Shown in pieces: positions 17,910-59,635 of a DNA stretch of 64,000 nucleotides. The position numbers and the translations under genes are program-made. The notes below the pieces were generated by a model, which saw nothing but the letters and a program-made list of their open reading frames with translations, made no database searches and was not told the DNA's origin. Within the stretch, counting starts at the first letter, position 1; each line of letters begins with the position of its first letter. The DNA lies in contig NC_043016.1 of the NCBI RefSeq assembly GCF_006345805.1, forward strand, positions 5,828,001 to 5,892,000, in the 5' to 3' direction. Source of the stretch: Octopus sinensis (lineage: Eukaryota).

Positions 17910-18914
17910 GTTCTAGAGTACATGTTAAACTTCTATAAGAAACGGAGTAACAGTGATTTCGAAGTGTTGACTTTGAGAGAGTAAGAAAGAATAAGACGCT
18001 CACCTACATTCGCACGAGTACAAGCACATTATATAAGGTGAGGTATTAAGATGCGAACACACACGCGCACACACATACACACACACACACACACATATCA
18101 GCAGTGACGTATGCATACTACTTTTCTTTATCTTTTACAGGTTTCAGTCATTGGACTGCGGTCAATACTTTTAAGTTTGGCATTTACTGTATTGGTCTCT
18201 TTTAGCCGAATCGCTAACTTATGGGGGATGTGAAGAAACCAACATCGGTTGTCAAGGTGGTGGGGAACACAAACATACGCGCGTGTACACGAAGGGTCCC
18301 CACCCCCACCAAAAATTTCTGTATCCTGAATCCACTTACAAGTCTTTGGTCAGCCCGAGGCGGCTATAGTAGTCATTTGTCGAAGGTGGCCACGCAGTGG
18401 GACTGAATGTTGTTAAGAAGCAAGCTTCTTACCACAAGAACTATAGGGGCCTGTGCCCCTATAATTCATTCACTAATGATTCACGCACAAAGCCAACAAT
18501 TTTGAGAAGGGAAACTCTAATTCTCATTGGACTTTTATTTTATCACAGGGTAAATATATTAATGGCTTCTGTAGGATTCGAACTCATAACGTACAGTGAT
18601 GGAATAAATACTGCAAAGCAATTTTCCCACTCTTTAGCATAAGTCCAGCAATTTGAGGGAAGGAACTATTCTATTAACATCAACCCAGGTGCACAACTGT
18701 TACTTACACTTTATCGACCCCCGAAAAGATGAAAGGCAACATAGACCTCAGCAGAATTTGGACCCAGAAAATAAAGATGGACGAAATACTGCTTTGCATT
18801 TTGTCCGCCGTGCTAACGATTCTGCCCACAAGGTCAACAAGTTCGAGGGAAGGGTTGATCGACTCCAGTATTCAGATGGTACTTATTTTATCGACTCCAT
18901 ATTACCTTAATATG

Positions 18915-20830
18915 GACAAAACAGGAAAAACATTGTTGCTTGAATGTTATACCAGGAGCGAGCCAGGGAAGCGGGGCTACAGAAAAAAAGTTACTGGAGG
19001 TCTGGAAAATATATTATCAACACGATGAGATGAAGGATATAAGAGAAAAAAAAATAGCTGATCAGATTAGACAAATGATAATTAAAAAAAACAAAGTGGA
19101 TAGTAAAGATTGAACAAGAGGTGATTACACTGGCAGTGCGAAAGAAACTGCAGGAAACTTCTGGTCCAAAAGAAATACCCGTTGAACGTAAGAATCTACA
19201 GAGCTTAGACATGGAATGGGGAAATGTACCGTCTATAGAAGACCTAAGTGTACTTCATACTGGAGAGTCGCCGAAAGAAATTAGCCCAGAACTAGCTACT
19301 CTCGGCGACAGAATTGCGGAAGTGATGCTCGTTGAGGAAAAGAAAAGGTTACTATCAATGAAGTCATGCGATATAACAAAGCTAGGATCAAAACTCAAGA
19401 AAGATAATGAAGTTGTCATGAGAATTCTAATTAAGGATATCCCTGATTCAAATTCTTTAATGTACGCCATTGCTTATGTCATTACTGAGAACATGGAAAT
19501 GTTTAGAGAAAGGAAAGAACAAAGAAATCAAGAACCAATCTGGACAATAAAAGAAAGCGTCGATAGATGGCGGAAGGGTTTAAATAAGATCAAGGAAGTA
19601 AGGACTGGTTAATATGAAGCTCAATGAAAGAGATCAGAATGACATGAATAAGAAATAACACCTGGTGGATTAAGGACATTCTGATTATATCGGATACGTT
19701 AAAACAGAAGATCAAAGAGAGAAGAATTAAGACCAAAAGAAACGAGGAAAATTTACAGTTTAAGCAAAATCAGAAGCTGTTGAATGAGATTCTGGTTGGA
19801 GGAGATAAGAAAGAAGCAGAGTTGCCTTCGTTTTGGAGCAAGATCTGGCCAGAAAATGTCAAAGACAACCACAAGGCAACCTGGCTTTATGAAGTGGAAG
19901 AAGAATTTGTTGACATGGAGATACAGGAGAAGATCACTGTCACGTTGGAAGATATACAAGCAGGAATCGGTAAGATGAGAAATTGGAAAACAACAGGCCC
20001 GTATCTAGTTCAAGGTTTTTGGTTCAAAGGTTTGATGAATTTACATCTCAGGCTACAAAAACGCAAGGCCGTGTGCGCCAAAGAATTGTACAAGAATTAT
20101 GTTGATAGAGAAGGACCAAGCCAAGGGTGCTGGAACAAGTAACAATCGTCCGATTACTTGTTTATCTATGACGTGGAAGCTTCTAAATGGGATAATGGGG
20201 AAAATATTGTACGAACACCTTGAAAGAAATGAACTCATAGCAGATAAACAGAAAAGCTTCAGGTTGGGATTAAGAGGGCCGAAGGATCAGTTGCTGAAAG
20301 ACGAGACAATTTTGGGAAACTGTCAGAAAAGGTCGACAAGTTTATCATTGGCTTGGATTGACTATAAGAAGGCATATGGTATGATTCCTTACTCTAAAAT
20401 GTCTGGAGATGGTCGAGACAGCTAAAAATATTTATTCAGAAATCAGTATGAGGAACTGGAAAACAGTTTTGACAGAAGATGTAAGGGAAATTGGGCAAGC
20501 CGACATTAAGGTGAGGTTCTTTCAAAAAAGACTCTGTGTTACTTCTTCTGTTTATTGTTAGTATGTTGCCATTCTCCACGGTTCTAAGGGAAAAGGGAGC
20601 TGGTTGCAAACTGCTGAAGAACCACGAGACCAATTAAACACTTACTGTTTATGGATGGTTTAAAGCTTTACAGATCTAGCAGAGGTTAACTGTATTCCCT
20701 TACTCAGGCCATGCAGATTTTCTCTCATGACATCTAGATGGCATTTGGTCAAGATAAATGCGCTGTTACTGAACTGAAGCAGCAGGATGGAGCTGAGATG
20801 TAACATAGGCAACTCAAGAGAACAAGGGAA
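18915..20830 (+). mobile_element. R4/Dong-like non-LTR retrotransposon, degraded
   Basis: ECYTRSEPGKRGYR, FWSKIW, MRNWKTTGP..VQGFWFK, RPITCLSMTWKLL, KDQLLKD and LSLAWIDYKKAY.MIP. Confidence 0.8.
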
Positions 20831-21338
20831 AATAGAAAGAATAATTCCTTCTACTATAGGCACAAGACCTGAAACTTTGGGGGAAGAGTGCTAGTCAATT
20901 TCATCGACCTCAGTGATGACTGGTACTTATTTCATCGAGCCCGAAAGGAGGAAAGGCAAAGTCGATCTCGGCGGAATTTGAACTCAGAACGTGAAGACGG
21001 ACGAAGTGCTGCTAAGCATTTTATCCGGTGTGCTAATGATTCTGTCAGCTCGCCGCCTTAATAATAATAATAATAATGGTTTCAAATTAAGAGAAAGAGA
21101 GAGGGAAGGACCAAAATTCAAATTTTCACTCTTAACTGTACTCAGAAATGATAGAGAAAAATCAAGACTTGGAACGCTATAAAGAACAATGACGTCATAG
21201 ATTAGAATATTTACCAGGTAAAATGAGAGTGTAACAAAACTTTTATTTAAACGGCTTATTTATCAGAGGGAAAAGTTCCAAAAGCCGACGCTTTTCGAAA
21301 TATATCTAAGCCATTAAACAACTAACAACATCGATCAA

Positions 21339-22007
21339 ATGCTAGCACATGCAAATACAAATGTAAATGGTTCCGATGAAAACATCGAAGAGATGGAGAA
21401 AAAGGAATTACTTTTATCTAAAAGTGTAACGGAGGTGAACAGGAATGCGACCACGTTGACAAGAGAATCTGAACTAAAAAAATCGGAAAGTTTAAGCAAA
21501 CAGCAGTTTGAAACACCAAGAAGACTCACGAAGTCTGCAGAAGATCAAGACAACGAAAACAGGAAGAGCAAGACTAGACTTATAATTCCAAAGAAAAAGT
21601 ACTTTCGCAAACATGCAAATTGTAGAGAATCGATAAGTTTTAGAGAACTTCCACCGCAAAAAAATGCTAATTACACTCAAACTGATGATGAATATCATGC
21701 TTTTAAAAGCAAATTAAAAGAATTAGAAACAGAAGTTAAAGAACTGAAAGAACATATCGGCGATCTAAGAGAAGTTAAAGAAAATTTATTGTCTAACATT
21801 AAAACTTATCAGCAGAGTAATAAAACTTTATCAGAATATTTTGAACTGACGTGTAGAGAGAGGGATAGTTTTCATAAGAAACTCCGCGAAATCGAATTGG
21901 CTTGCTATGACAAACCCAATCGATGTTTGGTCAAATTAATTACAGCAATTTTAAACGAAGAAGAATTTTGCGATGATAAAAATAAAGAGTCTTGTACAGT
22001 TATGTAG
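21339..22007 (+). CDS. Intronless ORF: coiled-coil protein with divergent EB1 C-terminal (EBH) motif and C-terminal CaaX box (CTVM)
   Basis: 222-aa ORF in non-repetitive sequence; in-frame stop at 21315-21317 upstream of the ATG. ERDSFHKKLREIELAC (21858-21905) matches 10/16 residues of human EB1 ERDFYFGKLRNIELIC, followed by L..I..IL..EEF and then CTVM-stop. Expression is not shown by the sequence. Confidence 0.7.
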   Translation: MLAHANTNVNGSDENIEEMEKKELLLSKSVTEVNRNATTLTRESELKKSESLSKQQFETPRRLTKSAEDQDNENRKSKTRLIIPKKKYFRKHANCRESISFRELPPQKNANYTQTDDEYHAFKSKLKELETEVKELKEHIGDLREVKENLLSNIKTYQQSNKTLSEYFELTCRERDSFHKKLREIELACYDKPNRCLVKLITAILNEEEFCDDKNKESCTVM

Positions 22008-22117
22008 AAAAGAACAAAAAATGTATTTTATTTATCAAAATAGAAAGAGAAGTATCTGTACTCTTGCTAATTTGGGATTTTTAAAACAAAGTATTTTGAA
22101 GTTATATATATATATAC

Positions 22118-22165
<48 letters not shown>

Positions 22166-22189
22166 GTATATATATCTTTTCTTTTATTC

Positions 22190-22342
22190 ATTTATGGGTT
22201 TCAGCCACAGGCTGTGGCCATGCTGGTGCACCGCCTCTACTGCGATTTTTCCAGGATTGCTTCTGGTGAAGTAGCGAGTTAGACGTTGCCGCTCGTCTTT
22301 GTGCCTCCTACCGCGATGTGGGTTCATCCGGTATTGCAGATA
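22190..22342 (-). mobile_element. Very short 3' fragment of a LINE related to 49766-51560
   Basis: IPDEPTSR*EAQRRAATSNSLLHQ versus VPDEPTSRQEGQMRAAASNSLMHQ; same ggcggtgc.ccagcatggccacagc tail. Confidence 0.75.
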
Positions 22343-22477
22343 AAAAAAAACTGAATACATGGAAATATATATATATATATATTTCTATGTTGTATTATTT
22401 TAAGGTTAAAGTGATTTACTGTTCCGTTAGTTTACGTTTGGTTTGCTTTAAATATAATTTCGTATTTTAAATATGTA

Positions 22478-22922
22478 CAAGGGTTGCACAAAATAATGGA
22501 AAGCACCACTTTTTATTTAACTTTTCTTTCTTTTTTTTTTCTATTGGCAATATCACAAATTCAAAACTGTTCTGCTCTGTCAATATATATGTGTTCATAT
22601 GCATTATGTATGCCTTGTACTCCATGATATAGTCTTTTTTTTTTCTTTCTATTTTTGCAAATATTTATAAAATGTGCGACTTTTCCGATTTCCAAATGGA
22701 ACAAATTGTTGAAGCACCTATGGCTGGAGCTTCGGTCGCTAAAACCGCTGAGTTGTTTAATATTTTGGGAGGTACAGTCTCTAAAACTACGTTGGCATTC
22801 TAAAAACAAGGTAAAAACCAAAGCTATGGTTGATATCACAGGTGGACCAATTCACTATCAAAAAAAAAAAAAAAAAAAACTTCCATATAACAAGGTGTTT
22901 CCATTATTTTGCCCAACCTGTG
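22478..22922. mobile_element. Non-autonomous Tc1/mariner derivative
   Basis: Imperfect TIRs caagggttgcacaaaataatggaaagcacc / ggtgtttccattattttgcccaacctgtg flanked by TA. Confidence 0.75.
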
Positions 22923-23006
22923 TATATCAATAGGTAACAATGTCAAATGGTATCTGTACTCTAATTAATCAATGTTTACAGTTTTAGGTTGATTAGTCTT
23001 TTAGGC

Positions 23007-23043
<37 letters not shown>

Positions 23044-24239
23044 TCCCGTTTTATGTATTGGCAACGTGGTCTTCGACAGTGTTCAATCACTTCTGTTCAA
23101 TACGTTTAGTTCGGTAATCCGGTTTAGTTTAGTTCGGTAATCCGGTTTAATGTTTTATGGTTTTTAAGTTCCATTGAAATGGCAATGTCCGTTTTCATGA
23201 TATTTCTATTTTCTACATTGTATTTTAGTCTTCTTTGCTTCGCAACCATAAGTGGGTAACGATTAATGTTTGAGATTTGATGCTTGTATCTGTTTTGCAA
23301 CAAAAATAAGTAGACAAAAATAAGGCGTAGGAGTGGCTGTGTGGTAAGTAGCTTGCTAACCAACCACATGGTTCCGGGTTCAGTCCCACTGCGTGGCATC
23401 TTGGGCAAGTGTCTTCTGCTATAGCATCTCTCTCTACTTCTGTCTGTCTGTCCGTATACATTTTAATTATTTCGCTTAAGCATGGCGATACTAAATAATC
23501 TGATGTTAAATTTCAATATACATATAGGCGCAAAAGTGGTTGTGTGGTAAGTAGCTTGCTTACAAACCACATGGTTCCGAGTTCAGTCCCACTGCGTGGC
23601 ACCTTGGGCAAGTGTCTTCTACTATAGCCTCGAGCCGACCAAAGCCTTGTGAGTGGATTTGGTAGACGGAAGCTGAAAGAAGCCCGTCGTATATATGTAT
23701 GTATATGTGTGTGTGTTTGTGTGTCTGTGTTTGTCCCCCCAACATCGCTTGACAACCGATGCTGGTGTGTTTACGTCCCCGTAACTTAGCGGTTCGGCAA
23801 AAGAGACCGATAGAATAAGTACTAGGCTTACAAAGAATAAGTCCTGGGGGTCGATTTCCTCGACTAAAGGCGATGCGAGAGAGTAAAAGAGATATGCTTC
23901 AGAACGAAACGTCAGTCAAGTTCAACGCAGGAATCAGAAATTGTCGTGAACTTCCTTAGAATACTGCTGTTCTGCAATGCACTCATAGTTGAGAGTTTAT
24001 GCATGAACACACGCGCCATATATTCATATTAACACACCCACATTATACATAAATATAAATTCATATAAATTATGTTTACATTAATAAAAACAAAAAAAAC
24101 AACAACATCATACATCTATCTGTCTCTGTCTAAATGTATCTACCTGTCTCCCTATTCTTCTCTATCTATCCATCCGGCCATCCATCTGTCTGTTCATCTA
24201 TCTTTCTACCTACCTATCACTTATCTGCCCGCACAGTTT

Positions 24240-24470
24240 TCTTATTTTTTTACTGCCCACAAGGGGCTACACACAGAGGGGACAAACAAGGACGGACAAA
24301 CGGATTAAGTCGATTATATCGACCCCAGTGCGCAACTGGTACTTATTTAATCGATCCCGAAAGGATGAAGGGCAAAGTCGACCTCGGCGGAATTTGAACT
24401 CAGAACGTGGCGGCAGACGAAATACCGCTAAGCACTTCGCCCGGCGTGCTAACGTTTCTGCCAGCTCGCT
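24240..24470 (-). mobile_element. SINE family C (Meta-domain-like centre)
   Basis: gaggtcgactttgcccttcatccttt.gggatcgatt.aataagtacc motif; other copies at about 9660-9820, 18660-18860, 20900-21060 and 28000-28140. The domain name is from memory. Confidence 0.7.
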
Positions 24471-25684
24471 TTCTACCTACCAACTTACCCATCTGCCCGT
24501 CTGTCTGTCTACGTACGAATCTATCTACGTCATATCTAGCTAGCTAGCTATATGTATCTATATGTAAAGATACGTGACGTGCGCGCATATATATCTACAT
24601 AAATATTTTTACGTTTTTATTGAAGACAGAAAAGTTAAACACAAACGAACACTCAACCCTCCTCCCGTCAGATTCTGACGAGAGCGCCTACCCCCTAGTT
24701 AGTCACTTAGTTGTATAATATACGTCAGTTATGTTAGCAAGTTCTTCTACCTTGATAATGGCTCATAATTTAGGCAGAAGGCCATCAATTTCGAGGGGCT
24801 TTAACCGATACCATTGACCCCTACCCATTAATTCTAGAAAGACGACGACGGGTACTTGAAGATACGTACATCAGGGTGTTGATAACAAGACGGAGACGAT
24901 TTGACTAAAGGGTATTTAACAGCAAGAGAAAGGTAAGGGGATGGAGGGATGAAGAAGCGATGAATAGAAAACAAATATAAAAAGCAAAAGAGAAAAGGAC
25001 CCTCTTCAAACACCGCCGCCAGCATCACCACAGGCAGACTCCTCGTTACAACGTTGGAGTGACTACTTTATACATATTAGGGTTTTCAAAGACTGATGGA
25101 ATGGAATGGGCAGCGTTATGAAACGTAAGGTACAGGCGTGGCTGTGCGATGGAAAACTTTGGTTCCTAACCACCTAGTTTCGGGTTCAGTCCCTCGGCGT
25201 GGCACCTGGGGCAAGTGTCTTCTATTGCGGTTTCGGACCAAACAATGTCTTTCGAGTGAATTCGACTGCGTGAATGTTTGCATCTCCTTGTCTCGAGATC
25301 GCATAACAGTTGAAAATGAATGTTACTGTCACACAAGTAGCTTTTCGTTTCCAATATTTTGTGAAAACATATCTGGTCATGGGGAAATATTTATTTACTT
25401 TACTTGGAAACAGGTGAACGTAGACGGTAGGAAGGGTATCTGGCTGTAGGAAAGCTGCTTTAATTAACTCCGTGCAAGCATGGAAAAGTGGACATCAGGA
25501 CGACGACGCCCCCACCTTCATGCTGAGGACTTTGGCTTCGAAGCCAAATTCTCTCTATTTCGTGGCTAAACTGCCATATTTCTTCAGTCCATTCTGCTTT
25601 CACCTAGCATAGTGAAATGTTCGGTCTCATACAACTCTTGATGATGTCTAGTTGATACTGTTCTATATTTTAGTGATGAGAAAT

Positions 25685-27767: not shown

Positions 27768-28349
27768 ATATATATATATATATATTATGCCATTATATTC
27801 AACACACACACGCACACACGGGTGAGTGCATAGCAGCGAAGAAAACAGGTACTTAACATATTTTGTAGGAGTTACATTATTAAAGAACAGTTTAATTCGG
27901 CCTCACGCAACTTGATGATAACAATAATGGTTTAAAATTTTGACACAAGGCAGCAATTTTAGGGGAGAAGGCAACTCGGGTTACGTCGACCGTAGTACTC
28001 AACTGGTACTTATTTTATCGATCCGGAGAGGGATGAAAAGGCAAAGTCGACCTCGGCGGAATCTGAACTCAGAATGTGAAGATAAATGAAGTGTAGCTAA
28101 GCACTTTGCCCGACATACTAACGATTCTGCCAGCACGCCATCTTTAATAATATGTGTATGTATGTTTTTTGTATTATACATACATATACGTATATACACA
28201 CATGTATATATATACACACATGTATATATATACATGCATATATACATGCATATATATATATATATATATATATATAACGGGAAGCTTTATGAAAATAAAC
28301 AAAAGACGAAGGTAGGTGGAATACAAACAAACAATTGTATTAGTATATA

Positions 28350-29619
28350 CGAGGGACGTTCAATAAGTAATGCCTCTGACCCACTTGCAGTTGTTTGATC
28401 TAGCTGAAATTTTGCATGTGCAATCATTTATATCTCTATAGAGTAAGTGGCAAATTACAGCTCTGAATTAATTGTGGTTTCTGATTTACAGGTGTTTGAA
28501 CCGAGTCAAGTGTGAAATGGAGCCTGTTGAGTGTCGAGCAGTGATCCGGTTTTTGTATTTGAAAGGACGCACACCACGGGAGACTTTGATGAAATGAAAG
28601 TAACTTATGGTGATGATGCTCCATCATATGACCTTGTAAAACGCTGGCATCGTGAATTCAAACATGGTCGGAACTCTGTGGAAACAGCTCCCAGATCTGG
28701 TCGCCCCTTCTGCCATTGATGAGGCATCTGTCCGTCAAGTTGAGGCTGCCATTTTGGAAGATCGACGCATAATTATTCGCCAAATAGCCCATGAGGTCAA
28801 GATTAGTACCGGGTCTATGGAAACTATCATTCATGACCTTTGCATATGCAAAAGGTGTCTGCCAGATGGATTCCCAGGTTGCTCGCGTCTTCCAGAAGCA
28901 AGAACGCGTCGAGTGCTCGAGGTGTGAATTTGGGAGATGTGCCAAGAAGATGAGTCAAAATTTTTCAAAAGACTGATACACAGGATGAAACATGGGTCCA
29001 TCACGATGATCCAGAGACCAAAAGCCAGTCAATGCAGTGGAAGCACCGTGACTCACCCCTCAAAGAAGGCAAGGGTGCAGCCCTCCGCGGCAAGGTCATG
29101 CTCACAGTCTTCTGGGACCAGGACGGAGTAGTGATGACAGATTTTCTGGCAAAGGTACCACAATTGCTTCACTTTTGAGGAAAATTAAGAGAAGTTATCA
29201 AAATCAAGAGGCGGGGCAAGATCAGCAAAGGCATCCTCCTTCTGCAGGGACAACGCTCCGGTCCACAACTCGCTTGTCGCCAGATCAGAAGCACAGGCGT
29301 ATGGCTATGAACTCCTCCCCATCCCCCCTACTTTCCTGACCTTGCACCCTCTGATTTTCACCTCTTCCCAATCATGAAGTTGTTTTTGAAAGGAAAGCGT
29401 TTCCCAGATGATGCAGCCTTGATTTCTGAAGTCACGTTGAGGTTGGAGGACCAAGCTGGGTTCTTCTACAAAAACGGTCTCCAGAGCCGCATCAAACGAT
29501 GGGAGAAATGCGTAACTCTGGGTGGTTCCTATGTAGAAAAAGACTAATAACTGTGCCAAGTTTCGTTGCTCAACTGCTATGGGAAGTGGGTCAGGGCAAT
29601 TACTTATTGAACGCCCCTC

Positions 29620-49765: not shown

Positions 49766-51560
49766 TGATTGATTGATTGATTCTAGTTTCAGCTTATGAG
49801 CTGTGGCCATGCTGGGGCACCGCCATTTGGTGTTGCTACTTGGTTTCACTTCATGGAGGCTTTCTAGCAACTGCTATTTGGTGCATGAGAGAGTTCGATG
49901 CAGCTGCCCTCATCTGCCCCTCCTGCCGTGAAGTTGGTTCATCTGGGACACCTGACAGGAAGAGATCCAGCTCCATTTTAAAGACATCTGTATCCACCCC
50001 ATGCAGGTCTCTCAGGTTCATCGGGAGGATATTGAAGAGCTGTGGGCCTCGGAAGCCCAGGCTATCACAGAATCTTGTCCTACATCTTGATGGCAAGTTT
50101 GGAGTCCTAGGCACCACGCAGTGGCGCCCAGTTCTGGCATTTGCGTAACTCTCGATGCCAAAGTTCAGGACACTTCCCTCCAGGATCTTCCAGATGTATA
50201 TTATGGCATATCTTTCCCGCCTATGCTCCAGGGAATATAATTTTAATCTCTTGAGTCTTTCCCAGTAGCTTACATTCTGCATAGAGGCTATCTTCTTCGT
50301 GTAGCTTCGTTGGATCGCCTCAAGTTCTGTGATCAACTTGACACTGGATGGTGACCATAGCTGAGAGCAATAGTCAAAGTGGCTTAGGACAAGTGTCTTC
50401 CAGAGGACCATCATGGTTTCTTGTTCTCTTGTTCTAAAGGTTCTAAGAATCCATCCAGCCAGCCGTCTGCATTTCATTGTCAGTTTAGCAACATGTGCAT
50501 GAAAGGTCGCGTCATCACTCATGTGAATACCCAGGTCACGCACTGATTGTGCCTCTGGGATTGCAATCCCTCCGGGTCCAGTGTATTCCTTGGGTATTGC
50601 ATTCAGTTTTGCATGCTGAGAGTATAAAGCTTGAAACTTTTCAGCATTGAACTGCATGCTATTCTTTTCAGCCCACTTGTATATTTCGTCCAGCTCATAT
50701 TGCAGGTGCTTAGTGTCTTCAGGGTTCTGTATTGCCTGTGAAACTTTTGTATCATCTGCATAACTTGTGATCGTGGCTCTCCGCGTGGCTGAGGGCATGT
50801 CTGAGAGGGCCATTATGAACAGTAGTGGTCCCAAAACAGTGCCCTGTGGAACACCGCTCACTATTTGCGTGCTAATGGAAGTGGCCCCATTGGCTACTAC
50901 CACCTGACTTCTATTCTTCAGAAAGTCGTGAAGCCATTCTCCTAGTTTTCCAACTATGCCAAGATCACGCAGTTTGTGACATATCATTCCATGATCAACT
51001 TTATCGAAGGCCTTTGCGAAGTCGAGATATATGACTTCCACATTTGAGTGGTTGAGCAGTTGTTTCAGCACCCAGTCATAGTGCTGCAGGAGCTGAGTTA
51101 AGCAGCTTCTTCCTGGTCGGAAACCATGTTGGGTGTCAGGCAGCAAGTTATTTTCTTCAAGGAAGGTGATTAGTTTCCTTCTGACTATTCGTTCCATGAC
51201 CTTGCTGATGTGTGAGGTCAGAGAGATAGGTCTGTAGTTCTTGGCCTCCGCTCTGCTACCTCCTTTATGAATAGGGCATATTTTACCTTCCTTCAGTTTT
51301 CTTGGAAGTTTGCCAGCTGCAAGGAAGTTCTGAAAGAGGAACTGCAGTGGTCTTGCTAAGACTCTCTTACATACTTTTAGGAGGATTGCCGGGAATCCAT
51401 CGGGGCCAATAGCTGAGTCTGTTTTCATTTCATCTATAGCCTTTATTACATCGTCTTCCTTTATATCGATGTAATTTATCGTCACCGCCTCTGATTCTAT
51501 ATCTGCAGTGGTAAAGAAGTCAGTTGGATTGCTGATTTGTAACATTTCACCAACATTTTC
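49766..51560 (-). mobile_element. 5'-truncated CR1/L2-group LINE with an uninterrupted RT ORF
   Basis: ORF 49851..51641 contains GPDG, YRPISLTS, QHGFR, VIYLDFAKAFDKV, SGVPQGTVLGPLLF, YADD and RDLGI. 3' UTR ends ggcggtgccccagcatggccacagc...gaaactaga(atca)n. No endonuclease domain. Confidence 0.9.
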
Positions 51561-51585
51561 CTGGAATAAATGAATTACAAACTCG

Positions 51586-52019
51586 GGATCTTTTCGGTTT
51601 GAACGGCAGTTTTTTAAAATGATTTCCACGTAACTAAACACTTTTAAACTTCGTATACTAGTAGAATGTGTTTATAAAACATCTTTTTCTCTTGGCTTTA
51701 TTGAGAAAATTCTATAGTTTATAAGATATTTCTCGTTTTTCTTTTCTTCAATTTCTGCAATTTCAACCAATCAGCGACGTCTATTGAGCTAAAAAGCATT
51801 CTGTGCCGTATGAATATGTCCCTCGTTTAAGAAACAGATTGGGCTTATTTACATTTGTGAAGAAAAAAAAAGATACCCTTCCCCCACCCCCACCCATAAC
51901 CCTAATCCTAAAAGAGACTGAAATGCAATAGATCGCTACTAGGGTCATAATTATGGGTGACAATTTCATTATGGGTGACAATTTCATAGAAAAAACTGCC
52001 GTTCAAACCAAAAAGATCC
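51586..52019 (-). mobile_element. GGATC MITE copy 4, no TSD
   Basis: Same TIRs; internal duplication of attatgggtgacaatttc; flanks caaactcg / aggatgga do not match. Confidence 0.9.
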
Positions 52020-53823
52020 AGGATGGATAACAGTGATTTTAAAAAGGTATATAAAAGATAATTTACTTTAACAGCATACTTTTCTGTTAGTAAATGTTTT
52101 CCTTTATACACAAACAATCACACATGGACTCGCTTGATGCGGGGTGGGGATTAAAGATTTAAACAAATTTTTTTTTAGGTGTTCTTGCTTATATCTAACA
52201 ATGCACACTGCATCATCGCTCCATAAAATGTGTTTATGGGAAGAAATATTTTGTAAAACATCAATAAATGTCAGACTGACAGAAACGAGGAAGGTACCAA
52301 GTGGTCGTGGGATGCACTAAAAATAACAGTTAAATCGCCCTTAAATCACCTTCTCGTCTGAAAATTATTTTGAAATTATAAACAGAAACAAACTGGTAAA
52401 TTTGGACTATTCATATTTTAAAACTGTGATTTTAAAAAATTTCTCAAAAATGCTGAAAGTTTAGGATTTAGGAAGGGTAATGAGAAAATTGAAAAGTTTA
52501 ATTTCCTGTTTGAAAATAAAAGAAGTAGGGACTAAAATGATCATCAATTTCCAAATTTTTTTTTAACCTTCATTTTAAGTGTGCAGTGCAAAAAAATTAT
52601 AGGCCAGAATCAAAAGCAAGAGAGAGGTTTCATAAGTTTTCAAAATTTTCAAAGTCTTTTTTCATCAAGAAGTGCATAGGGCAAAGAAAAAAAATTTGGA
52701 TGAAATCAGTCTGGAAGGAGGGGGGAGGGGGGGGGGCATAAATTTTCAAAACATTTTTTTTCATAAAAACCTTGTTCCCATCATTTGCAAAGGTGTGGTG
52801 AGAAACAAATTTGAAAAATCCCCAAAATTCTGCCAAGGTCAATTTTGCCTTTCATTCTTTCGGGGTCAATAAATTAAGTACCAGTTTGATATTGGGGTTG
52901 ATTTAATTGACTGTCCCTCCCCACCCCCAAAATTTCGGGCCTTGTGCCTAGAGTAGGAAAGAACATGTGTAGAGATGAATGGGGACAGGCTTTCTGTCTT
53001 GGAGGATAGAGTTTACAAGATTATAAAAGATAGTGAGTGGTGGGGAGAGGGTGAAGGAAGAAATATAATGAATGAAGAACAAGTATTTGAATGGATGATA
53101 AACACGGGGGAAGTAGGTGGCAACTGTAGAGATTGGATCAGGTTTGAGGGGTGGGTGTAGTGAATGGTGGAAAAAAATATCATCTGCAGCATCGTCTACT
53201 ATGTTTTCCATGGGTTGCATGATTTGATAGGATGATCCACAGGACTGTATTGAGCTCCAATGTCTGTTTTGGCAATCACTTTACAGAGTGTACGGGGTGA
53301 TTGTTTTTTTTTTTGGTTTTTTTTTGGATTTTTTGTGCCTCTGGCACTAGTGAGATCATCGAGTAACTTGTAAGATGAGAGAAGGAAGAATCCACCTTGA
53401 GTGAGTGGAGGATGCAGTATTTGAGAAAGGGCAATGTGGCATTTTATCGGGTATTGAGAGACTAGGGTATGATAAAGAGACAAGCCCAGGTGTGTTGTTG
53501 TGGAAGAGATAAACAGCTACCTCGTATTATACAAGTACAGGTGTAGGTGGAGAAAAGGTGGAAATGCTGGCGGTGGGATGCCAGAGCATCTCAAGATATA
53601 GGAAACTGAGTATAAAAGAGGATACAGACAGTGGATCGGGTGAAGAGAAAGCGGGTGGGGTAATTTAATGAGCATGTCAGAGGAGAGTATCAGCTGGGGG
53701 TGGAGGTGAATGTAGTGAGAGATGGAAAAAAGGTGGAGGTGCAGCTGACGAAATGCAGGTAAACAAGCTGAGAATGTATAAAATATATGATTAAATAAAT
53801 GAGGTAAATATTCTTTCACTGAC

Positions 53824-54456: not shown

Positions 54457-55330
54457 TCATTTTATTTTTATCCAATTATAACGGTTTTCAATTTTTGGCA
54501 CAAGGCCAACAATCTTTAGTAGGAGGGAGTTAGTTGATTATATCAACCCCCAGTTAAGGAGGAGAGAAAACATCAACCTCGATGAGACTGGAATTTAGCA
54601 AGTAAAGAGTGGAAAGAAATGCTGCTAAGCATTTTGTGCAATGTGCTAACAATTCTCCCAGCTCACAAACTTAATGATAATAATAATAATAATAATAATA
54701 ATCTTTTCTACTATAGGATAAGGCCTGAAATTTGGGGGAGAAGGATAGTCGATTTTTTGATGTTGTTGTTCACTGCCTGGAACTGAACCCGGGCATATGG
54801 TTTAGTGGTTAATTCGCGGGTTACTAACCTCAAGATTCCGAGTTTGATTCCAGGCAGTGATCTTAATAATAATAATAATTATTATTATTATTTCTACTTA
54901 TAGCTACAATGTGTTGAACTGGACATAAAATATGCAAGCTGCTGAGTTATAATAAGATGTACCACATAAAGACAGGTGTGGATCATCTTTACCTTCCCAG
55001 AGCCCATGGAATTCAAGGCTCAATCTAATTTGAACTCTCTTACAAAAACTACCACAACTGGACCTGGTGGTGTTTCCACAAATAAGGAAGTCTTTCTAGT
55101 CATAGCTTTTTTTTTTTTATCTCAAACTTCCAGGCTTTGGAACTCTCTTCTATTTCATTGTTTTCCCCACTTCTTTCAACCCAAATTCTTTCAAGACTAA
55201 AAGTAAATTCATTCCTTTTATCTTAATTTCTTCTTCATAGTCCTTTTACAGTATGTAGCATTTTGCCATGTTTGGGACTTGCAAAAAAAAAAAAAATAAA
55301 GAAAAATAAAGAAAAAATAAAATAGCTTAC

Positions 55331-57929: not shown

Positions 57930-59635
57930 GGATATAGCATCACATGATGTGGAAGGCAACTGGAGGTTTCTCGGGACAACCTGCTGAGGGCCAATGACTA
58001 GATCTGTGGATGGTGCAAAGTCTCCTCTCGACACAAGGTAATGTGGTGGTGGAACAGTGTTGTTGATAGGGCTATCAGAGAAAAGAAACAGGCTTGGAAG
58101 GACTGGAAGAACGGTGGTAGCAGGGAATTGTATCAGACTGCCAAAAGGGAAGCTAGGAGACAGGTTTATTTAGCCAGAGGGGAAGCAGATAAGAAAAAAT
58201 TTGCATGTTCTGCGCCATGAGGACTAAAGATGTGAGGTATTTTGTGTTGCAAGACAGTGTGTGAGAGAGAATCATGATGTCATAGGAGAGAAATGTGTCC
58301 ACATGGATGATGGCTCACTTGCACTAGATGAGGCTGCAAAGAGAGAGGTGTGGAGACGCCACTAAGAAAGGTTGCTCAATACAGAGAATGAATGGGAGAA
58401 AGAAAGTCTGCCAAATGCCAACCCAACAGAGGGACCAGCTATCCAAATTGACAGTACTTTGGTAGATAAAGCAATTAAGAGTATGAAGACAGGGAAAGCC
58501 CCCGCCCCATCAGGAATCACCGCAGAGTTGCTCGAAATATCTGGCGGTGTCAGCTATAGCCTAGTCACCTATATATTTAAGCAGGTAATACACGAAGGAG
58601 TCAGACCCAATGACTTGTGTAGCAGCACCATAGTCAACTGCTACAAAGGTAAAGGTGATGCTTTAGATACAAATAATTACAGAGGTATCAAGTTGTTGGA
58701 TCAGGTAATGAAGGTCACGGAGAGGGTCATAGCCCAACTAATTAGGGAGAGAGTCAGTTTAGATGAGATGCAGTTTGGGTTCGTGCCAGGGAAAAGCACC
58801 ACTGATGCTATATTTCTGGTAAGACAACTGCAGAAGAAATACCTAGCCAAAGATAGACCTCTGTACCTGGCTTTCGTTGACATGGAGAAAGCCTTTGACA
58901 GGGTCCCTGATCCCTTAACTGGTGGTCAATGAGGAAACTAGGGATAGATGAATGGTTAGTGAAAGCTGTGCAAGCCATGTACAGAAATGCTGTCAGTAAG
59001 GTGAGGGTTGGCAACGAGTACAGTGAAGAATTCCGGGTAGAGGTAGGGAAGATAATTTTTGTATGTAGCAGATGATCAGGAGCAATAAACACTGAAAATG
59101 TGCAGAGAACAACTTCTGTCACATTCCTGGGAGAAAAACTAGTTGTTGATAGCTTTCGTTACCTAGGTGACCAAGTCAGTAGTGGGGGAGGGTGCTCTGA
59201 AGGTGTAGCTGTTACAATAAGAATAGCCTGGGCAAAGTTCAGAGAGCTCTTACCTCTGCTGGTGACAAAGGGTCTCTCGCTCAGAGTAAAAGGTAGACTG
59301 TATAATGCATGTGTACGAACAGCCATGTTACATGGCAGTGAAACATGGGCCGTAACTGCTGAGGACATGTGTAAGCTGACAAGGAATGAAGCCAGTATGC
59401 TCCGATGGATGTGTAATGTCAGTGTGCATACTCGACAGAGTGTAACTTGAGAGAAAAGTTGGACCTAAGTAGCATCAGATGCGGTGTGCAAGAGAGACGA
59501 TTGCACTGGTATGGTCATATGGTGGGAATGGATAAGGATAGCTGTGTGCAAAGGTATCACACCCTAGTGGTTGAAGGAACATGTGGAAGAGGTAGACCCA
59601 GGAAGACCTGGGATGAGGTGGTGAAGCATGCCCTT
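57930..59635 (+). mobile_element. RTE LINE fragment, same family as 11985-13345, internally deleted
   Basis: MWWWN, KAPAPSGI, YRGIKLL, MQFGFVPGKSTTDAIF, LAFVDMEKAFDRV, LHGSETW and LHWYGHMV. Confidence 0.88.

What the first reader, a model, noticed from the sequence alone, without database searches (positions are those of the whole stretch)
21339..22007. CH-less, CaaX-terminated EB1-like (EBH) protein: possible membrane-anchored EB decoy or adaptor
Seen: an uninterrupted 222-aa ORF in unique sequence with a charged disordered N-terminal half, ~60 residues of heptad repeat (FKSKLKELETEVKELKEHIGDL...), then ERDSFHKKLREIELAC...LVKLITAILNEEEF, ending KNKES-CTVM-stop. Known: the EB1/MAPRE EBH domain is ERDFYFGKLRNIELIC...L.RIVDILY, mediating dimerisation and SxIP binding. 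Canonical EBs also have an N-terminal microtubule-binding CH domain and end in an EEY/F tail, and CaaX with X=M is a farnesyltransferase signal. Here there is no CH domain, the FYF groove residues are S-F-H, and a prenylation box ends the protein. Inference: a lineage-specific, possibly retroposed, EB derivative that could heterodimerise with EB1 or tether plus-end proteins to membranes. It would be nested antisense in NBEA if this region is intronic. I do not know a described protein with this architecture.
Basis: partly seen in the sequence, partly recalled or inferred. Interest (0 to 1): 0.85.

Follow-up and report, generated by a model that had tools for sequence, protein, structure and literature searches.

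The report
Orphan octopus coiled-coil ORF, EB1-like end
An intact 222-codon single-exon reading frame in the Octopus vulgaris genome encodes a coiled-coil protein whose end weakly resembles the cargo-binding domain of the microtubule-tip protein EB1 and finishes with a lipid-anchor signal, but it has no detectable relative anywhere and no evidence yet that it is expressed.

Summary
The ORF at 21339..22007 (+) is real, unique in the window and far longer than chance allows (0 of 3000 shuffles). It carries a 68-residue heptad run and ends in CTVM-stop. The window is Octopus vulgaris OX597829.1, where the ORF is annotated as a single-exon 'hypothetical predicted protein'.

The EB1 likeness is real but weak. 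Pfam PF03271 gives 19.3 bits against a cut-off of 27 (E 0.0015), and hhalign gives 63% probability. The only PDB sequence hits to this stretch (residues 173-193) are EB1 chimeras. The match survives shuffling of the upstream coil and disappears when residues 173-205 are shuffled. The heptad register and the hydrophobic core of the second helix match EB1. However, 5 of 11 SxIP-pocket residues are lost, including F216, F218 and Y247. Shuffled controls also gave spurious Pfam hits at this E-value in 3 of 20 cases.

No CH exon lies in the 64 kb. No homologue turned up in searches of 5.8 and 1.84 billion proteins. I found no retroposition hallmarks and no NBEA exon.

Expression, conservation, dimerisation and prenylation could not be tested here. 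My best reading, at about 0.4, is a lineage-restricted, CH-less, probably farnesylated coiled-coil dimer with a diverged EBH-like end.

The parts
21339..22007 (+). Single-exon ORF of 222 codons plus stop. It corresponds to OX597829.1:3808780-3809448 (minus strand in the record), annotated as 'Hypothetical predicted protein' of Octopus vulgaris.
   Evidence: length against shuffles
21315..21317 (+). In-frame TAA 7 codons upstream of the ATG. Any upstream exon would have to splice in downstream of this point.
   Evidence: read from the sequence; no AG with a pyrimidine tract of 60% or more between 21318 and 21860
21339..21674 (+). N-terminal half (residues 1-112): charged and low in hydrophobic residues. 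AlphaFold gives a low-confidence helix at 12-53 and pLDDT below 50 for most of 54-110.
21561..21611 (+). Basic, acid-free stretch RKSKTRLIIPKKKYFRK (residues 75-91). It contains an 'IP' dipeptide in an SxIP-like context, or it may be NLS-like.
   Evidence: read from the translation; not tested
21702..21905 (+). Uninterrupted heptad run F122-C189 (68 residues). It lies within the predicted long helix 116-191.
   Evidence: 16 of 20 a/d positions are hydrophobic and 0 of 5000 shuffles reach this; helix pLDDT above 90 for residues 120-160
21855..21968 (+). EBH-like motif, residues 173-210: RERDSFHKKLREIELACYDKPNRCLVKLITAILNEEEF. It forms the end of the long helix, a short loop (190-194) and a second helix (195-206).
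   Evidence: Pfam PF03271 at 19.3 bits, E 0.0015, residues 173-205 matching profile positions 3-39 of 41; hhalign 62.6%; PDB EB1 chimeras; shuffle controls; MAFFT extends the likeness to 'NEEEF' against 'TEEGF'
21993..22004 (+). CaaX box C219-T-V-M222 directly before the stop codon (22005-22007). A further Cys, C209, lies 10 residues upstream.
   Evidence: chance frequency 0.38%; CTVM is the CAAX motif of RND3
21178..21197 (+). Possible core promoter: TATAAAG (21178-21184), followed 5 nt later by the only TGACGTCA (CRE palindrome) in the whole window (21190-21197), 142-149 nt upstream of the ATG. This is an inference only.

Best explanation
This is a lineage-restricted, intronless protein-coding gene, or very recently active coding sequence, of Octopus vulgaris. 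Its roughly 25 kDa product has three parts: a poorly structured charged N-terminal half, a 68-residue coiled coil, and a diverged EB-homology-like end.

The coil runs, in the same heptad register as EB1, into a helix-loop-helix at residues 173-210. The protein ends in a farnesylation box, CTVM.

Inferred mechanism: two chains pair through the coiled coil, and the short second helices pack back to close a small four-helix bundle as in EB1. The C-terminal cysteine is farnesylated, which gives a lipid handle for membranes or for a lipid-binding partner.

The hydrophobic core of the EBH fold is kept, but the aromatic walls of the SxIP pocket are gone (F216 to S, F218 to H, Y247/A248 absent). The protein is therefore more likely a dimerisation or anchoring module with altered ligand specificity than a canonical SxIP receptor. 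Without a CH domain it cannot track microtubule ends on its own.

Shown: the ORF, the coil periodicity, the motif likeness, the CaaX box and the absence of a CH domain. Inferred: homology to EBH, dimer and bundle formation, prenylation, expression and function.
For: - ORF length is far beyond chance and heptad periodicity is far beyond chance. The frame also ranks 4th of about 1000 open segments in the window for protein-like composition, behind only transposon ORFs.
- EB1 is the only match that depends specifically on residues 173-205. It stays the top or near-top Pfam hit (20.9-23.2 bits) in 5 of 5 variants with the upstream coil shuffled, and vanishes in 5 of 5 variants with 173-205 shuffled.
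- A local EBH HMM gives 16.1 bits against a maximum of 12.6 in 40000 shuffles, and no other open segment of the window exceeds 6.2 bits.
- hhalign against 25 EBH sequences gives probability 62.6%, E 7e-5.
- phmmer against the PDB: every hit that covers residues 173-193 is an EB1 fusion chimera (6pfp, 4xa1, 4xa6); the other three listed hits (8q5h, 1gk6, 3jqh) lie elsewhere in the protein.
- The register is identical to EB1: R175/F178/L182/I185/C189 correspond to R214(a)/Y217(d)/L221(a)/I224(d)/C228(a). This is read from the sequence.
- The helix-2 core L197,V198,I201,I204,L205 corresponds to V238,L239,I242,I245,L246 (alignment).
- MAFFT independently aligns the motif and extends it to EEF.
- AlphaFold from the single sequence gives helix 116-191, a break, then helix 193-205.
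- No CH exon lies in the 64 kb. The upstream in-frame stop and the absence of a credible acceptor favour a single exon.
- CTVM is the CAAX box of farnesylated RND3.
- Argument from divergence: if the end derives from an EB gene, about 45% identity in the most conserved EB domain implies long divergence. An unselected 229-codon frame with 8% stop probability per codon would not have stayed open that long.
Against: - The Pfam score is below the gathering cut-off (19.3 against 27).
- Shuffled coiled-coil controls produced unrelated Pfam hits with E <= 0.0015 in 3 of 20 sequences (Cep57_CLD_2 8e-5, DUF2252 8.5e-4, EIF_2_alpha 1.4e-3). Family-wise, the Pfam E-value alone is therefore weak.
- An equal-scoring DUF4600 hit exists, though it is fragile.
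- Five of 11 SxIP-pocket residues and 4 of 8 columns invariant in my EBH alignment are not kept.
- No homologue at all was found: E <= 10 among 5.8e9 clusters, and E <= 1e-3 among 1.84e9 representatives apart from two repetitive false hits. That includes the annotated proteomes of other octopuses, if they are in that collection.
- There is no transcript evidence. The gene model comes from a pipeline that also accepts ab initio predictions, and its neighbour model (19222-19623) looks like a transposon fragment.
- Foldseek gave nothing.
- The higher-confidence AlphaFold model used an EBH alignment and is circular.
Confidence: 0.4

Rival explanations
1. It is a genuine orphan coiled-coil protein whose resemblance to the EB1 EBH domain is chance or convergence. 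A short charged-hydrophobic pattern (ERD..F..KLR.IEL.C) at the end of a coil would arise this way. Under this reading it has no evolutionary or functional link to EB proteins. With a basic cluster and a CxxM box, it could instead behave like small farnesylated coiled-coil proteins such as Kugelkern or lamins at the nuclear envelope, or like Spindly and CENP-F, where the farnesyl group binds a protein partner.
For: - The Pfam score is below cut-off, and spurious hits of equal E-value occur in 3 of 20 shuffled controls.
- hhalign probability is only 63%.
- The invariant F216, Y247, A248 and T249 are not kept.
- No EB protein reaches significance in the large searches.
- Coil, basic cluster (PKKK) and CxxM together match the architecture described for Kugelkern (PMC2947476).
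Against: - The EB1 match is specific to residues 173-205 and independent of coil composition.
- It covers 37 of the 41 Pfam profile positions.
- It sits at the same place (end of the coil) and in the same heptad register as in EB1.
- The helix-2 hydrophobic pattern and the following EEF also match.
Confidence: 0.25
2. It is not a functional gene. It would be an unexpressed or decaying reading frame, for example a remnant of a partial duplicate or retrocopy of some coiled-coil gene, picked up by gene prediction in a transposon-rich region.
For: - It is a cluster of one, with no orthologue annotated in any other genome.
- The annotation pipeline merges ab initio predictions.
- The surroundings are SINE, LINE and mariner debris.
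- There is no + strand AATAAA between the stop and 24083.
- The ATG has C at -3.
Against: - A 229-codon open frame is very improbable without selection or very recent origin.
- Perfect heptad periodicity over 68 residues marks true coding sequence.
- There is no frameshift or stop.
- A TATA-like box and the only CRE palindrome of the window lie 140-160 nt upstream.
- There are no retrocopy hallmarks.
Confidence: 0.22
3. It is the last exon of a larger multi-exon gene, possibly an ordinary EB paralogue whose CH-domain exons lie beyond the window. Only the C-terminal part of the ORF would then be translated as part of that protein.
For: In canonical EB genes the EBH is encoded at the 3' end. Octopus introns can be long (median 2.5 kb, with many far longer).
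Against: - No CH-like sequence lies in the 21 kb upstream or anywhere else in the 64 kb.
- An in-frame stop lies 7 codons before the ATG.
- No AG with a pyrimidine tract of 60% or more lies within 21318-21860.
- The public model is single-exon.
- No EB-like or other protein containing this sequence exists in the databases.
Confidence: 0.08

Closest known systems
EB1/MAPRE family, EB-homology (EBH) domain, Pfam PF03271
   Same: - A coiled coil runs in the same heptad register into ERD-x-[FY]-x-x-KLR-x-IE-L-x-C, then a short loop and a second amphipathic helix ending in IL, followed by an acidic stretch with Phe.
- The residues corresponding to E213, R214, D215, K220, L221, R222, I224, E225, L226, C228, I242, I245 and L246 are identical.
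   Different: - There is no CH domain and no EEY/F tail.
- F216 is S, F218 is H, G219 is K, Q229 is Y, and Y247/A248 are absent or replaced by N/E.
- The loop is 2 residues shorter, and the coil is about 68 residues rather than about 40.
- The protein ends in CaaX.
- The score is below Pfam's cut-off, so it cannot be filed as a member on present evidence.
Engineered EB1-C / EB1-C deltaAc fragments (CH-less EB1 dimerisation domain)
   Same: The architecture is a linker, a coiled coil and an EBH, without a CH domain. Such fragments heterodimerise with full-length EBs and act as dominant negatives, removing EBs from microtubule tips (PMC2686402).
   Different: Those are laboratory truncations of EB1 itself. 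Here the coil and EBH are highly diverged, so heterodimerisation with octopus EB1 is unproven and may not occur. Even EB2 pairs poorly with EB1 in vitro.
Farnesylated coiled-coil proteins (Kugelkern, B-type lamins; Spindly and CENP-E/F from my own knowledge)
   Same: A coiled coil is combined with a C-terminal CxxM or CaaX box. Kugelkern is also lineage-restricted, and it combines a coil, an NLS and a farnesyl group (PMC2947476; PMC10630089 for CENP-E farnesylation).
   Different: There is no sequence similarity to any of them, and this protein is much smaller. A nuclear localisation signal is only suggested by PKKK.
RND3/RhoE C-terminus
   Same: The CAAX box is identical, CTVM. RND3 is farnesylated (my own knowledge).
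   Different: RND3 is an unrelated protein, a small GTPase. Only the four-residue signal is shared.
DUF4600 / CCDC169 (Pfam PF15372)
   Same: It gives an equal-scoring sub-threshold Pfam hit (19.3 bits, residues 127-187) and has similar protein size.
   Different: The hit disappears when either 116-172 or 173-205 is shuffled. It behaves like generic coiled-coil similarity and is below the cut-off of 27.

Membership tests
EB1/MAPRE (end-binding) family | N-terminal calponin-homology (CH) domain that binds microtubule ends | tested here: not met
   There is no CH hit in the ORF. tblastn with human EB1 finds no CH-like segment anywhere in the 64 kb. Exons beyond the window are not excluded.
EB1/MAPRE (end-binding) family | EBH domain recognised by Pfam PF03271 at or above the gathering score | tested here: not met
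   The score is 19.3 bits against a cut-off of 27, E 0.0015, covering profile positions 3-39 of 41. hhalign probability is 62.6%.
EB1/MAPRE (end-binding) family | Parallel coiled coil leading in register into the EBH motif | tested here: met
   The heptad run F122-C189 is continuous. Its a/d positions R175, F178, L182, I185 and C189 align with EB1 R214, Y217, L221, I224 and C228 (alignments).
EB1/MAPRE (end-binding) family | Conserved SxIP-binding pocket (L221, L246, F216', Y217', F218, K220', R222, E225, Y247, A248; Q229 for the Ser network) | tested here: not met
   The residue list comes from PMC5686072. The ORF has L, L, S, F, H, K, R, E, N (or gap), E (or gap), Y. Five are identical, one is conservative and five are lost.
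EB1/MAPRE (end-binding) family | Acidic C-terminal tail ending in EEY/F (CAP-Gly binding) | tested here: not met
   The protein ends ...DDKNKESCTVM. An internal EEEF aligns with EB 'EEGF', not with the terminal EEY.
EB1/MAPRE (end-binding) family | Dimeric four-helix bundle | not testable with these tools
   Only monomer predictions were possible. The helix-loop-helix topology is predicted. Foldseek was uninformative.
CaaX farnesyltransferase substrates | Cys at -4, small or aliphatic a2, X = M/S/Q/A/C, directly at the C-terminus | tested here: met
   C219-T-V-M222 is followed by TAG. The box is identical to that of RND3. The chance frequency of such an ending is 0.38%.
CaaX farnesyltransferase substrates | Actual prenylation, and conservation of the box in orthologues | not testable with these tools
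   No orthologue was found, and no biochemical data are available.
DUF4600 / CCDC169 (PF15372) | Profile match at or above the gathering score and robust to controls | tested here: not met
   The score is 19.3 bits against 27. The hit is lost in all 20 shuffled variants, including the five that keep 173-222 intact and the five that keep 116-172 intact.
Processed retrogene | Poly(A) remnant, target-site duplications and an identifiable parent gene | tested here: not met
   There is no A-tract after the stop. The only flanking repeat is a 12-nt A-rich one at 20829 and 22037, which does not abut a tail. No parent was found. The ORF is intronless, which is compatible but not diagnostic.

The most novel reading that the evidence does not exclude
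Octopus encodes a natural, CH-less, farnesyl-anchored EB-homology protein. Such a protein would either heterodimerise with EB1, acting as an endogenous dominant-negative or membrane tether for microtubule plus ends, or use a remodelled EBH pocket to recruit a new class of ligands to membranes. Its own basic 'TRLIIP' stretch might act as an EB-binding or autoinhibitory element.
Probability: 0.12. Interest if true: 0.7.

Novelty: new variant of a known kind. Interest (0 to 1): 0.4.

Why it matters
CH-less EB1 C-terminal fragments are known only as laboratory dominant-negative tools. A naturally encoded, lipid-anchored version would be a new way for a cell to regulate or localise the microtubule plus-end network. 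It would also be an example of a young, lineage-restricted cephalopod gene built from an ancient domain.

If it proves not to be expressed or not conserved, it is simply one more unsupported 'hypothetical protein' model in a repeat-rich region, and the EB likeness is a curiosity. The case also gives a practical caution. For coiled-coil sequences, Pfam E-values near 1e-3 arise by chance in about 15% of shuffled controls.

Tried and rejected
- **Homologue searches.** I ran a word-indexed search of 5.8e9 proteins at E <= 0.01 and again at E <= 10, which returned only the protein itself (one search was a parameter error). A full HMMER scan of 1.84e9 representatives returned only two repetitive false positives. 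Back-translated pattern scans of metagenome and viral contigs found nothing.
- **Structure.** The single-sequence AlphaFold model had low overall confidence, and Foldseek against the PDB gave 0 hits. The alignment-guided model was confident, but it is circular and Foldseek gave no hit below E = 2. Helical hairpins are too simple for fold search.
- **DUF4600/CCDC169 as an alternative family.** I rejected it as generic coiled-coil similarity. The literature gives no function for it.
- **Retroposition hallmarks.** None were convincing.
- **Splicing into the ORF.** There is no acceptor with a pyrimidine-rich tract.
- **RNA families and tRNA-derived heads near the ORF.** Only (TA)n artefacts turned up.
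- **NBEA nesting.** No spanning gene appears in the returned gene calls. No NBEA-like exon appears among the most protein-like open segments, which are LINE, mariner or unknown. Not all open segments were scanned.
- **Literature on natural farnesylated or CH-less EBH proteins.** None was found.

Full report
**What is there**

The window is part of Octopus vulgaris chromosome record OX597829.1 (assembly GCA_951406725.2). The ORF at 21339..22007 (+) corresponds to 3,808,780-3,809,448 on the record's minus strand. It is annotated there as a single-exon 'Hypothetical predicted protein' of 222 aa.

An in-frame TAA lies at 21315-21317, so the open frame is 229 codons.

That length is not a chance product of A-rich DNA:
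- None of 3000 dinucleotide-preserving shuffles of 21001-22300 reached 222 codons (maximum 186).
- The ORF's own composition predicts a stop every 12 codons or so, giving P of about 2.5e-9 for 229 open codons.

The frame also ranks fourth of about 1000 open segments in the window for protein-like amino-acid composition, behind only transposon ORFs. Residues F122 to C189 form an unbroken 3-4 heptad pattern with 16 of 20 a/d positions hydrophobic, and 0 of 5000 shuffles reach this. I therefore take it as true coding sequence, either current or very recently so.

**Surroundings**

The ORF DNA is unique within the window. Immediately upstream lies a roughly 230-nt SINE-like repeat with an (AAT)n tail (about 20853-21078), which has at least four other copies in the window. 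Downstream lies a (TA)n tract and another short repeat.

The rest of the window is transposon-rich:
- an intact 596-aa reverse-transcriptase ORF at 49851-51641 (-) and an RT fragment at 58372-58932;
- a mariner-type transposase fragment at 28954-29175;
- many microsatellites.

The neighbouring annotated 'gene' (133 aa, window 19222-19623) lies inside what reads like a LINE remnant. It has no Pfam hit. This lowers my trust in single-exon models in this region.

I found no CH-domain exon anywhere in the 64 kb using tblastn with human EB1. The only hit was the motif itself.

I found no NBEA-like exon among the most protein-like open segments. The gene calls returned for +/-10 kb show no spanning gene. 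The NBEA remark therefore stays unverified.

**Is the C-terminus an EBH domain?**

Evidence for:
- Pfam's EB1 model (PF03271) matches residues 173-205 over profile positions 3-39 of 41, with E 0.0015.
- phmmer against all PDB sequences returns six sub-threshold hits; the three that reach residues 173-193 are all EB1 fusion chimeras, aligned on ERDFYFGKLRNIELIC.
- hhalign against an alignment of 25 EBH sequences gives 62.6% probability, E 7e-5.
- A local HMM from that alignment scores the ORF at 16.1 bits. The maximum is 12.6 in 20000 full shuffles and 20000 heptad-preserving shuffles, and no other open segment of the window exceeds 6.2 bits.
- When only the upstream coil (116-172) is shuffled, EB1 remains a hit in 5 of 5 variants at 20.9-23.2 bits. 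When only 173-205 is shuffled, it is lost in 5 of 5.
- The heptad register runs into the motif exactly as in EB1: R175/F178/L182/I185/C189 correspond to R214/Y217/L221/I224/C228.
- The hydrophobic face of the second helix is kept: L197, V198, I201, I204 and L205 correspond to V238, L239, I242, I245 and L246.
- MAFFT, without guidance, aligns 'AIL--NEEEF' with 'DILYATEEGF'.
- Single-sequence AlphaFold predicts helix 116-191, a break, then helix 193-205.

Evidence against:
- 19.3 bits is below Pfam's curated 27.
- The same kind of shuffled coiled-coil sequences gave unrelated Pfam hits at E <= 0.0015 in 3 of 20 cases. The family-wise significance of the Pfam hit alone is therefore only about 0.15.
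- Four of the eight columns invariant in my EBH alignment (F216, Y247, A248, T249) are not kept.
- Fold search was uninformative.
- The confident alignment-guided model is circular.

I put homology to EBH at roughly 0.6-0.65.

The equal-scoring DUF4600 hit is fragile. It is lost in all 20 shuffled variants, including those that keep half of its footprint, and I treat it as coiled-coil noise.

**What the protein could and could not do**

The SxIP pocket of EB1 is built from L221, L246, F216', Y217', F218, K220', R222, E225, Y247 and A248. Q229 takes part in the serine hydrogen-bond network (PMC5686072).

The ORF keeps L, L, K, R and E, and has F in place of Y217. It has S for F216, H for F218, Y for Q229, and N/E or a gap for Y247/A248. 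The fold-forming core is thus retained while the aromatic pocket walls are gone. Canonical SxIP binding should not be assumed.

There is no CH domain and no EEY/F tail. The protein therefore can neither track microtubule ends itself nor bind CAP-Gly domains in the usual way.

CTVM is a textbook FTase box: Cys at -4, Val at a2, Met at X. It is identical to the CAAX motif of RND3, and such an ending occurs on only 0.38% of open segments in the window. No polybasic patch is adjacent. C209, ten residues upstream, could be a second lipidation site, but this is inference.

Engineered CH-less EB1 C-terminal fragments heterodimerise with EBs and act as dominant negatives (PMC2686402). However, even EB2 pairs poorly with EB1 in vitro, so pairing of this much more diverged coil with octopus EB1 is doubtful.

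An alternative model is the class of small or large farnesylated coiled-coil proteins: Kugelkern and lamins at the nuclear envelope (PMC2947476) and CENP-E (PMC10630089). In CENP-E the farnesyl group acts at the kinetochore corona rather than at a membrane; Kugelkern and lamin Dm0 act on the nuclear membrane directly (PMC2947476).

**Gene status**

No homologue exists among 5.8e9 protein clusters at E <= 10. None exists among 1.84e9 representatives at E <= 1e-3, apart from two repetitive false positives. Metagenome and viral contigs gave nothing.

The annotation pipeline combined transcripts, protein alignments and ab initio predictions (PMC10700109). The existence of the model therefore does not prove expression.

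Features favouring a single-exon gene:
- the upstream in-frame stop;
- no pyrimidine-rich acceptor inside the ORF;
- a TATAAAG at 21178-21184, followed 5 nt later by the only TGACGTCA in the whole 64 kb, at 21190-21197 (expected 0.63 per window). I noticed this after the fact, so I treat it only as a lead.

Features against:
- no + strand AATAAA after the stop until 24083;
- a weak Kozak context;
- no retrocopy hallmarks to explain the origin.

**Verdict**

The most likely reading (about 0.4) is a lineage-restricted, CH-less, probably farnesylated coiled-coil dimer with a diverged EBH-like end and altered ligand specificity. The rivals are:
- a real orphan coiled-coil protein with only chance likeness to EB1 (about 0.25);
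- a non-functional frame (about 0.22);
- a terminal exon of a larger gene (about 0.08).

Expression and cross-species conservation are the decisive missing data, and neither could be obtained with the tools at hand.

Noticed in passing
window 21561-21611 (residues 75-91): The acid-free basic stretch RKSKTRLIIPKKKYFRK contains an 'IP' dipeptide in the kind of basic context that surrounds EB-binding SxIP motifs. T-R-L-I-I-P resembles a TRIP motif with two extra residues, but it lacks Ser/Thr at motif position 1. PKKK could equally be NLS-like.
   Followed up: no
window 21178-21197: TATAAAG is followed 5 nt later by the only TGACGTCA (CRE palindrome) in the whole 64 kb, 142-149 nt upstream of the ORF's ATG. 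A CAG|GTAAAA donor-like site lies at 21215-21223.
   Followed up: partly
window ~20853-21078 (+); copies ~24290-24470, ~27990-28150, ~54520-54700 (+), ~52825-52956 (-): A SINE-like repeat family of about 230 nt with an (AAT)n tail. One copy abuts the ORF's 5' flank. ARAGORN (run on 18000-25000 only) found no tRNA-like head in the copies at 20853 and 24290.
   Followed up: partly
window 49851-51641 (-): An intact 596-aa ORF with a full RVT_1 reverse-transcriptase domain (112 bits). This may be a recently active LINE. A second RT fragment lies at 58372-58932 (+).
   Followed up: partly
window 28640-29544 (+): A mariner/Tc1-type transposase remnant (Transposase_1, 42.5 bits at 28954-29175), split over several frames.
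   Followed up: partly
window 19121-20142 (+): The neighbouring annotated 133-aa 'gene' (19222-19623) lies in open frames that read like the region upstream of a LINE reverse-transcriptase domain. It has no Pfam hit. This suggests that some single-exon models in this annotation are transposon fragments.
   Followed up: partly
window 21981-21986: The only + strand AATAAA near the 3' end lies inside the coding sequence, 19 nt before the stop codon. The next one is at 24083.
   Followed up: no
method note: Heptad-preserving shuffles of this coiled coil gave unrelated Pfam hits with E as low as 8e-5 (Cep57_CLD_2). Pfam E-values around 1e-3 are therefore not trustworthy for coiled-coil queries.
   Followed up: yes
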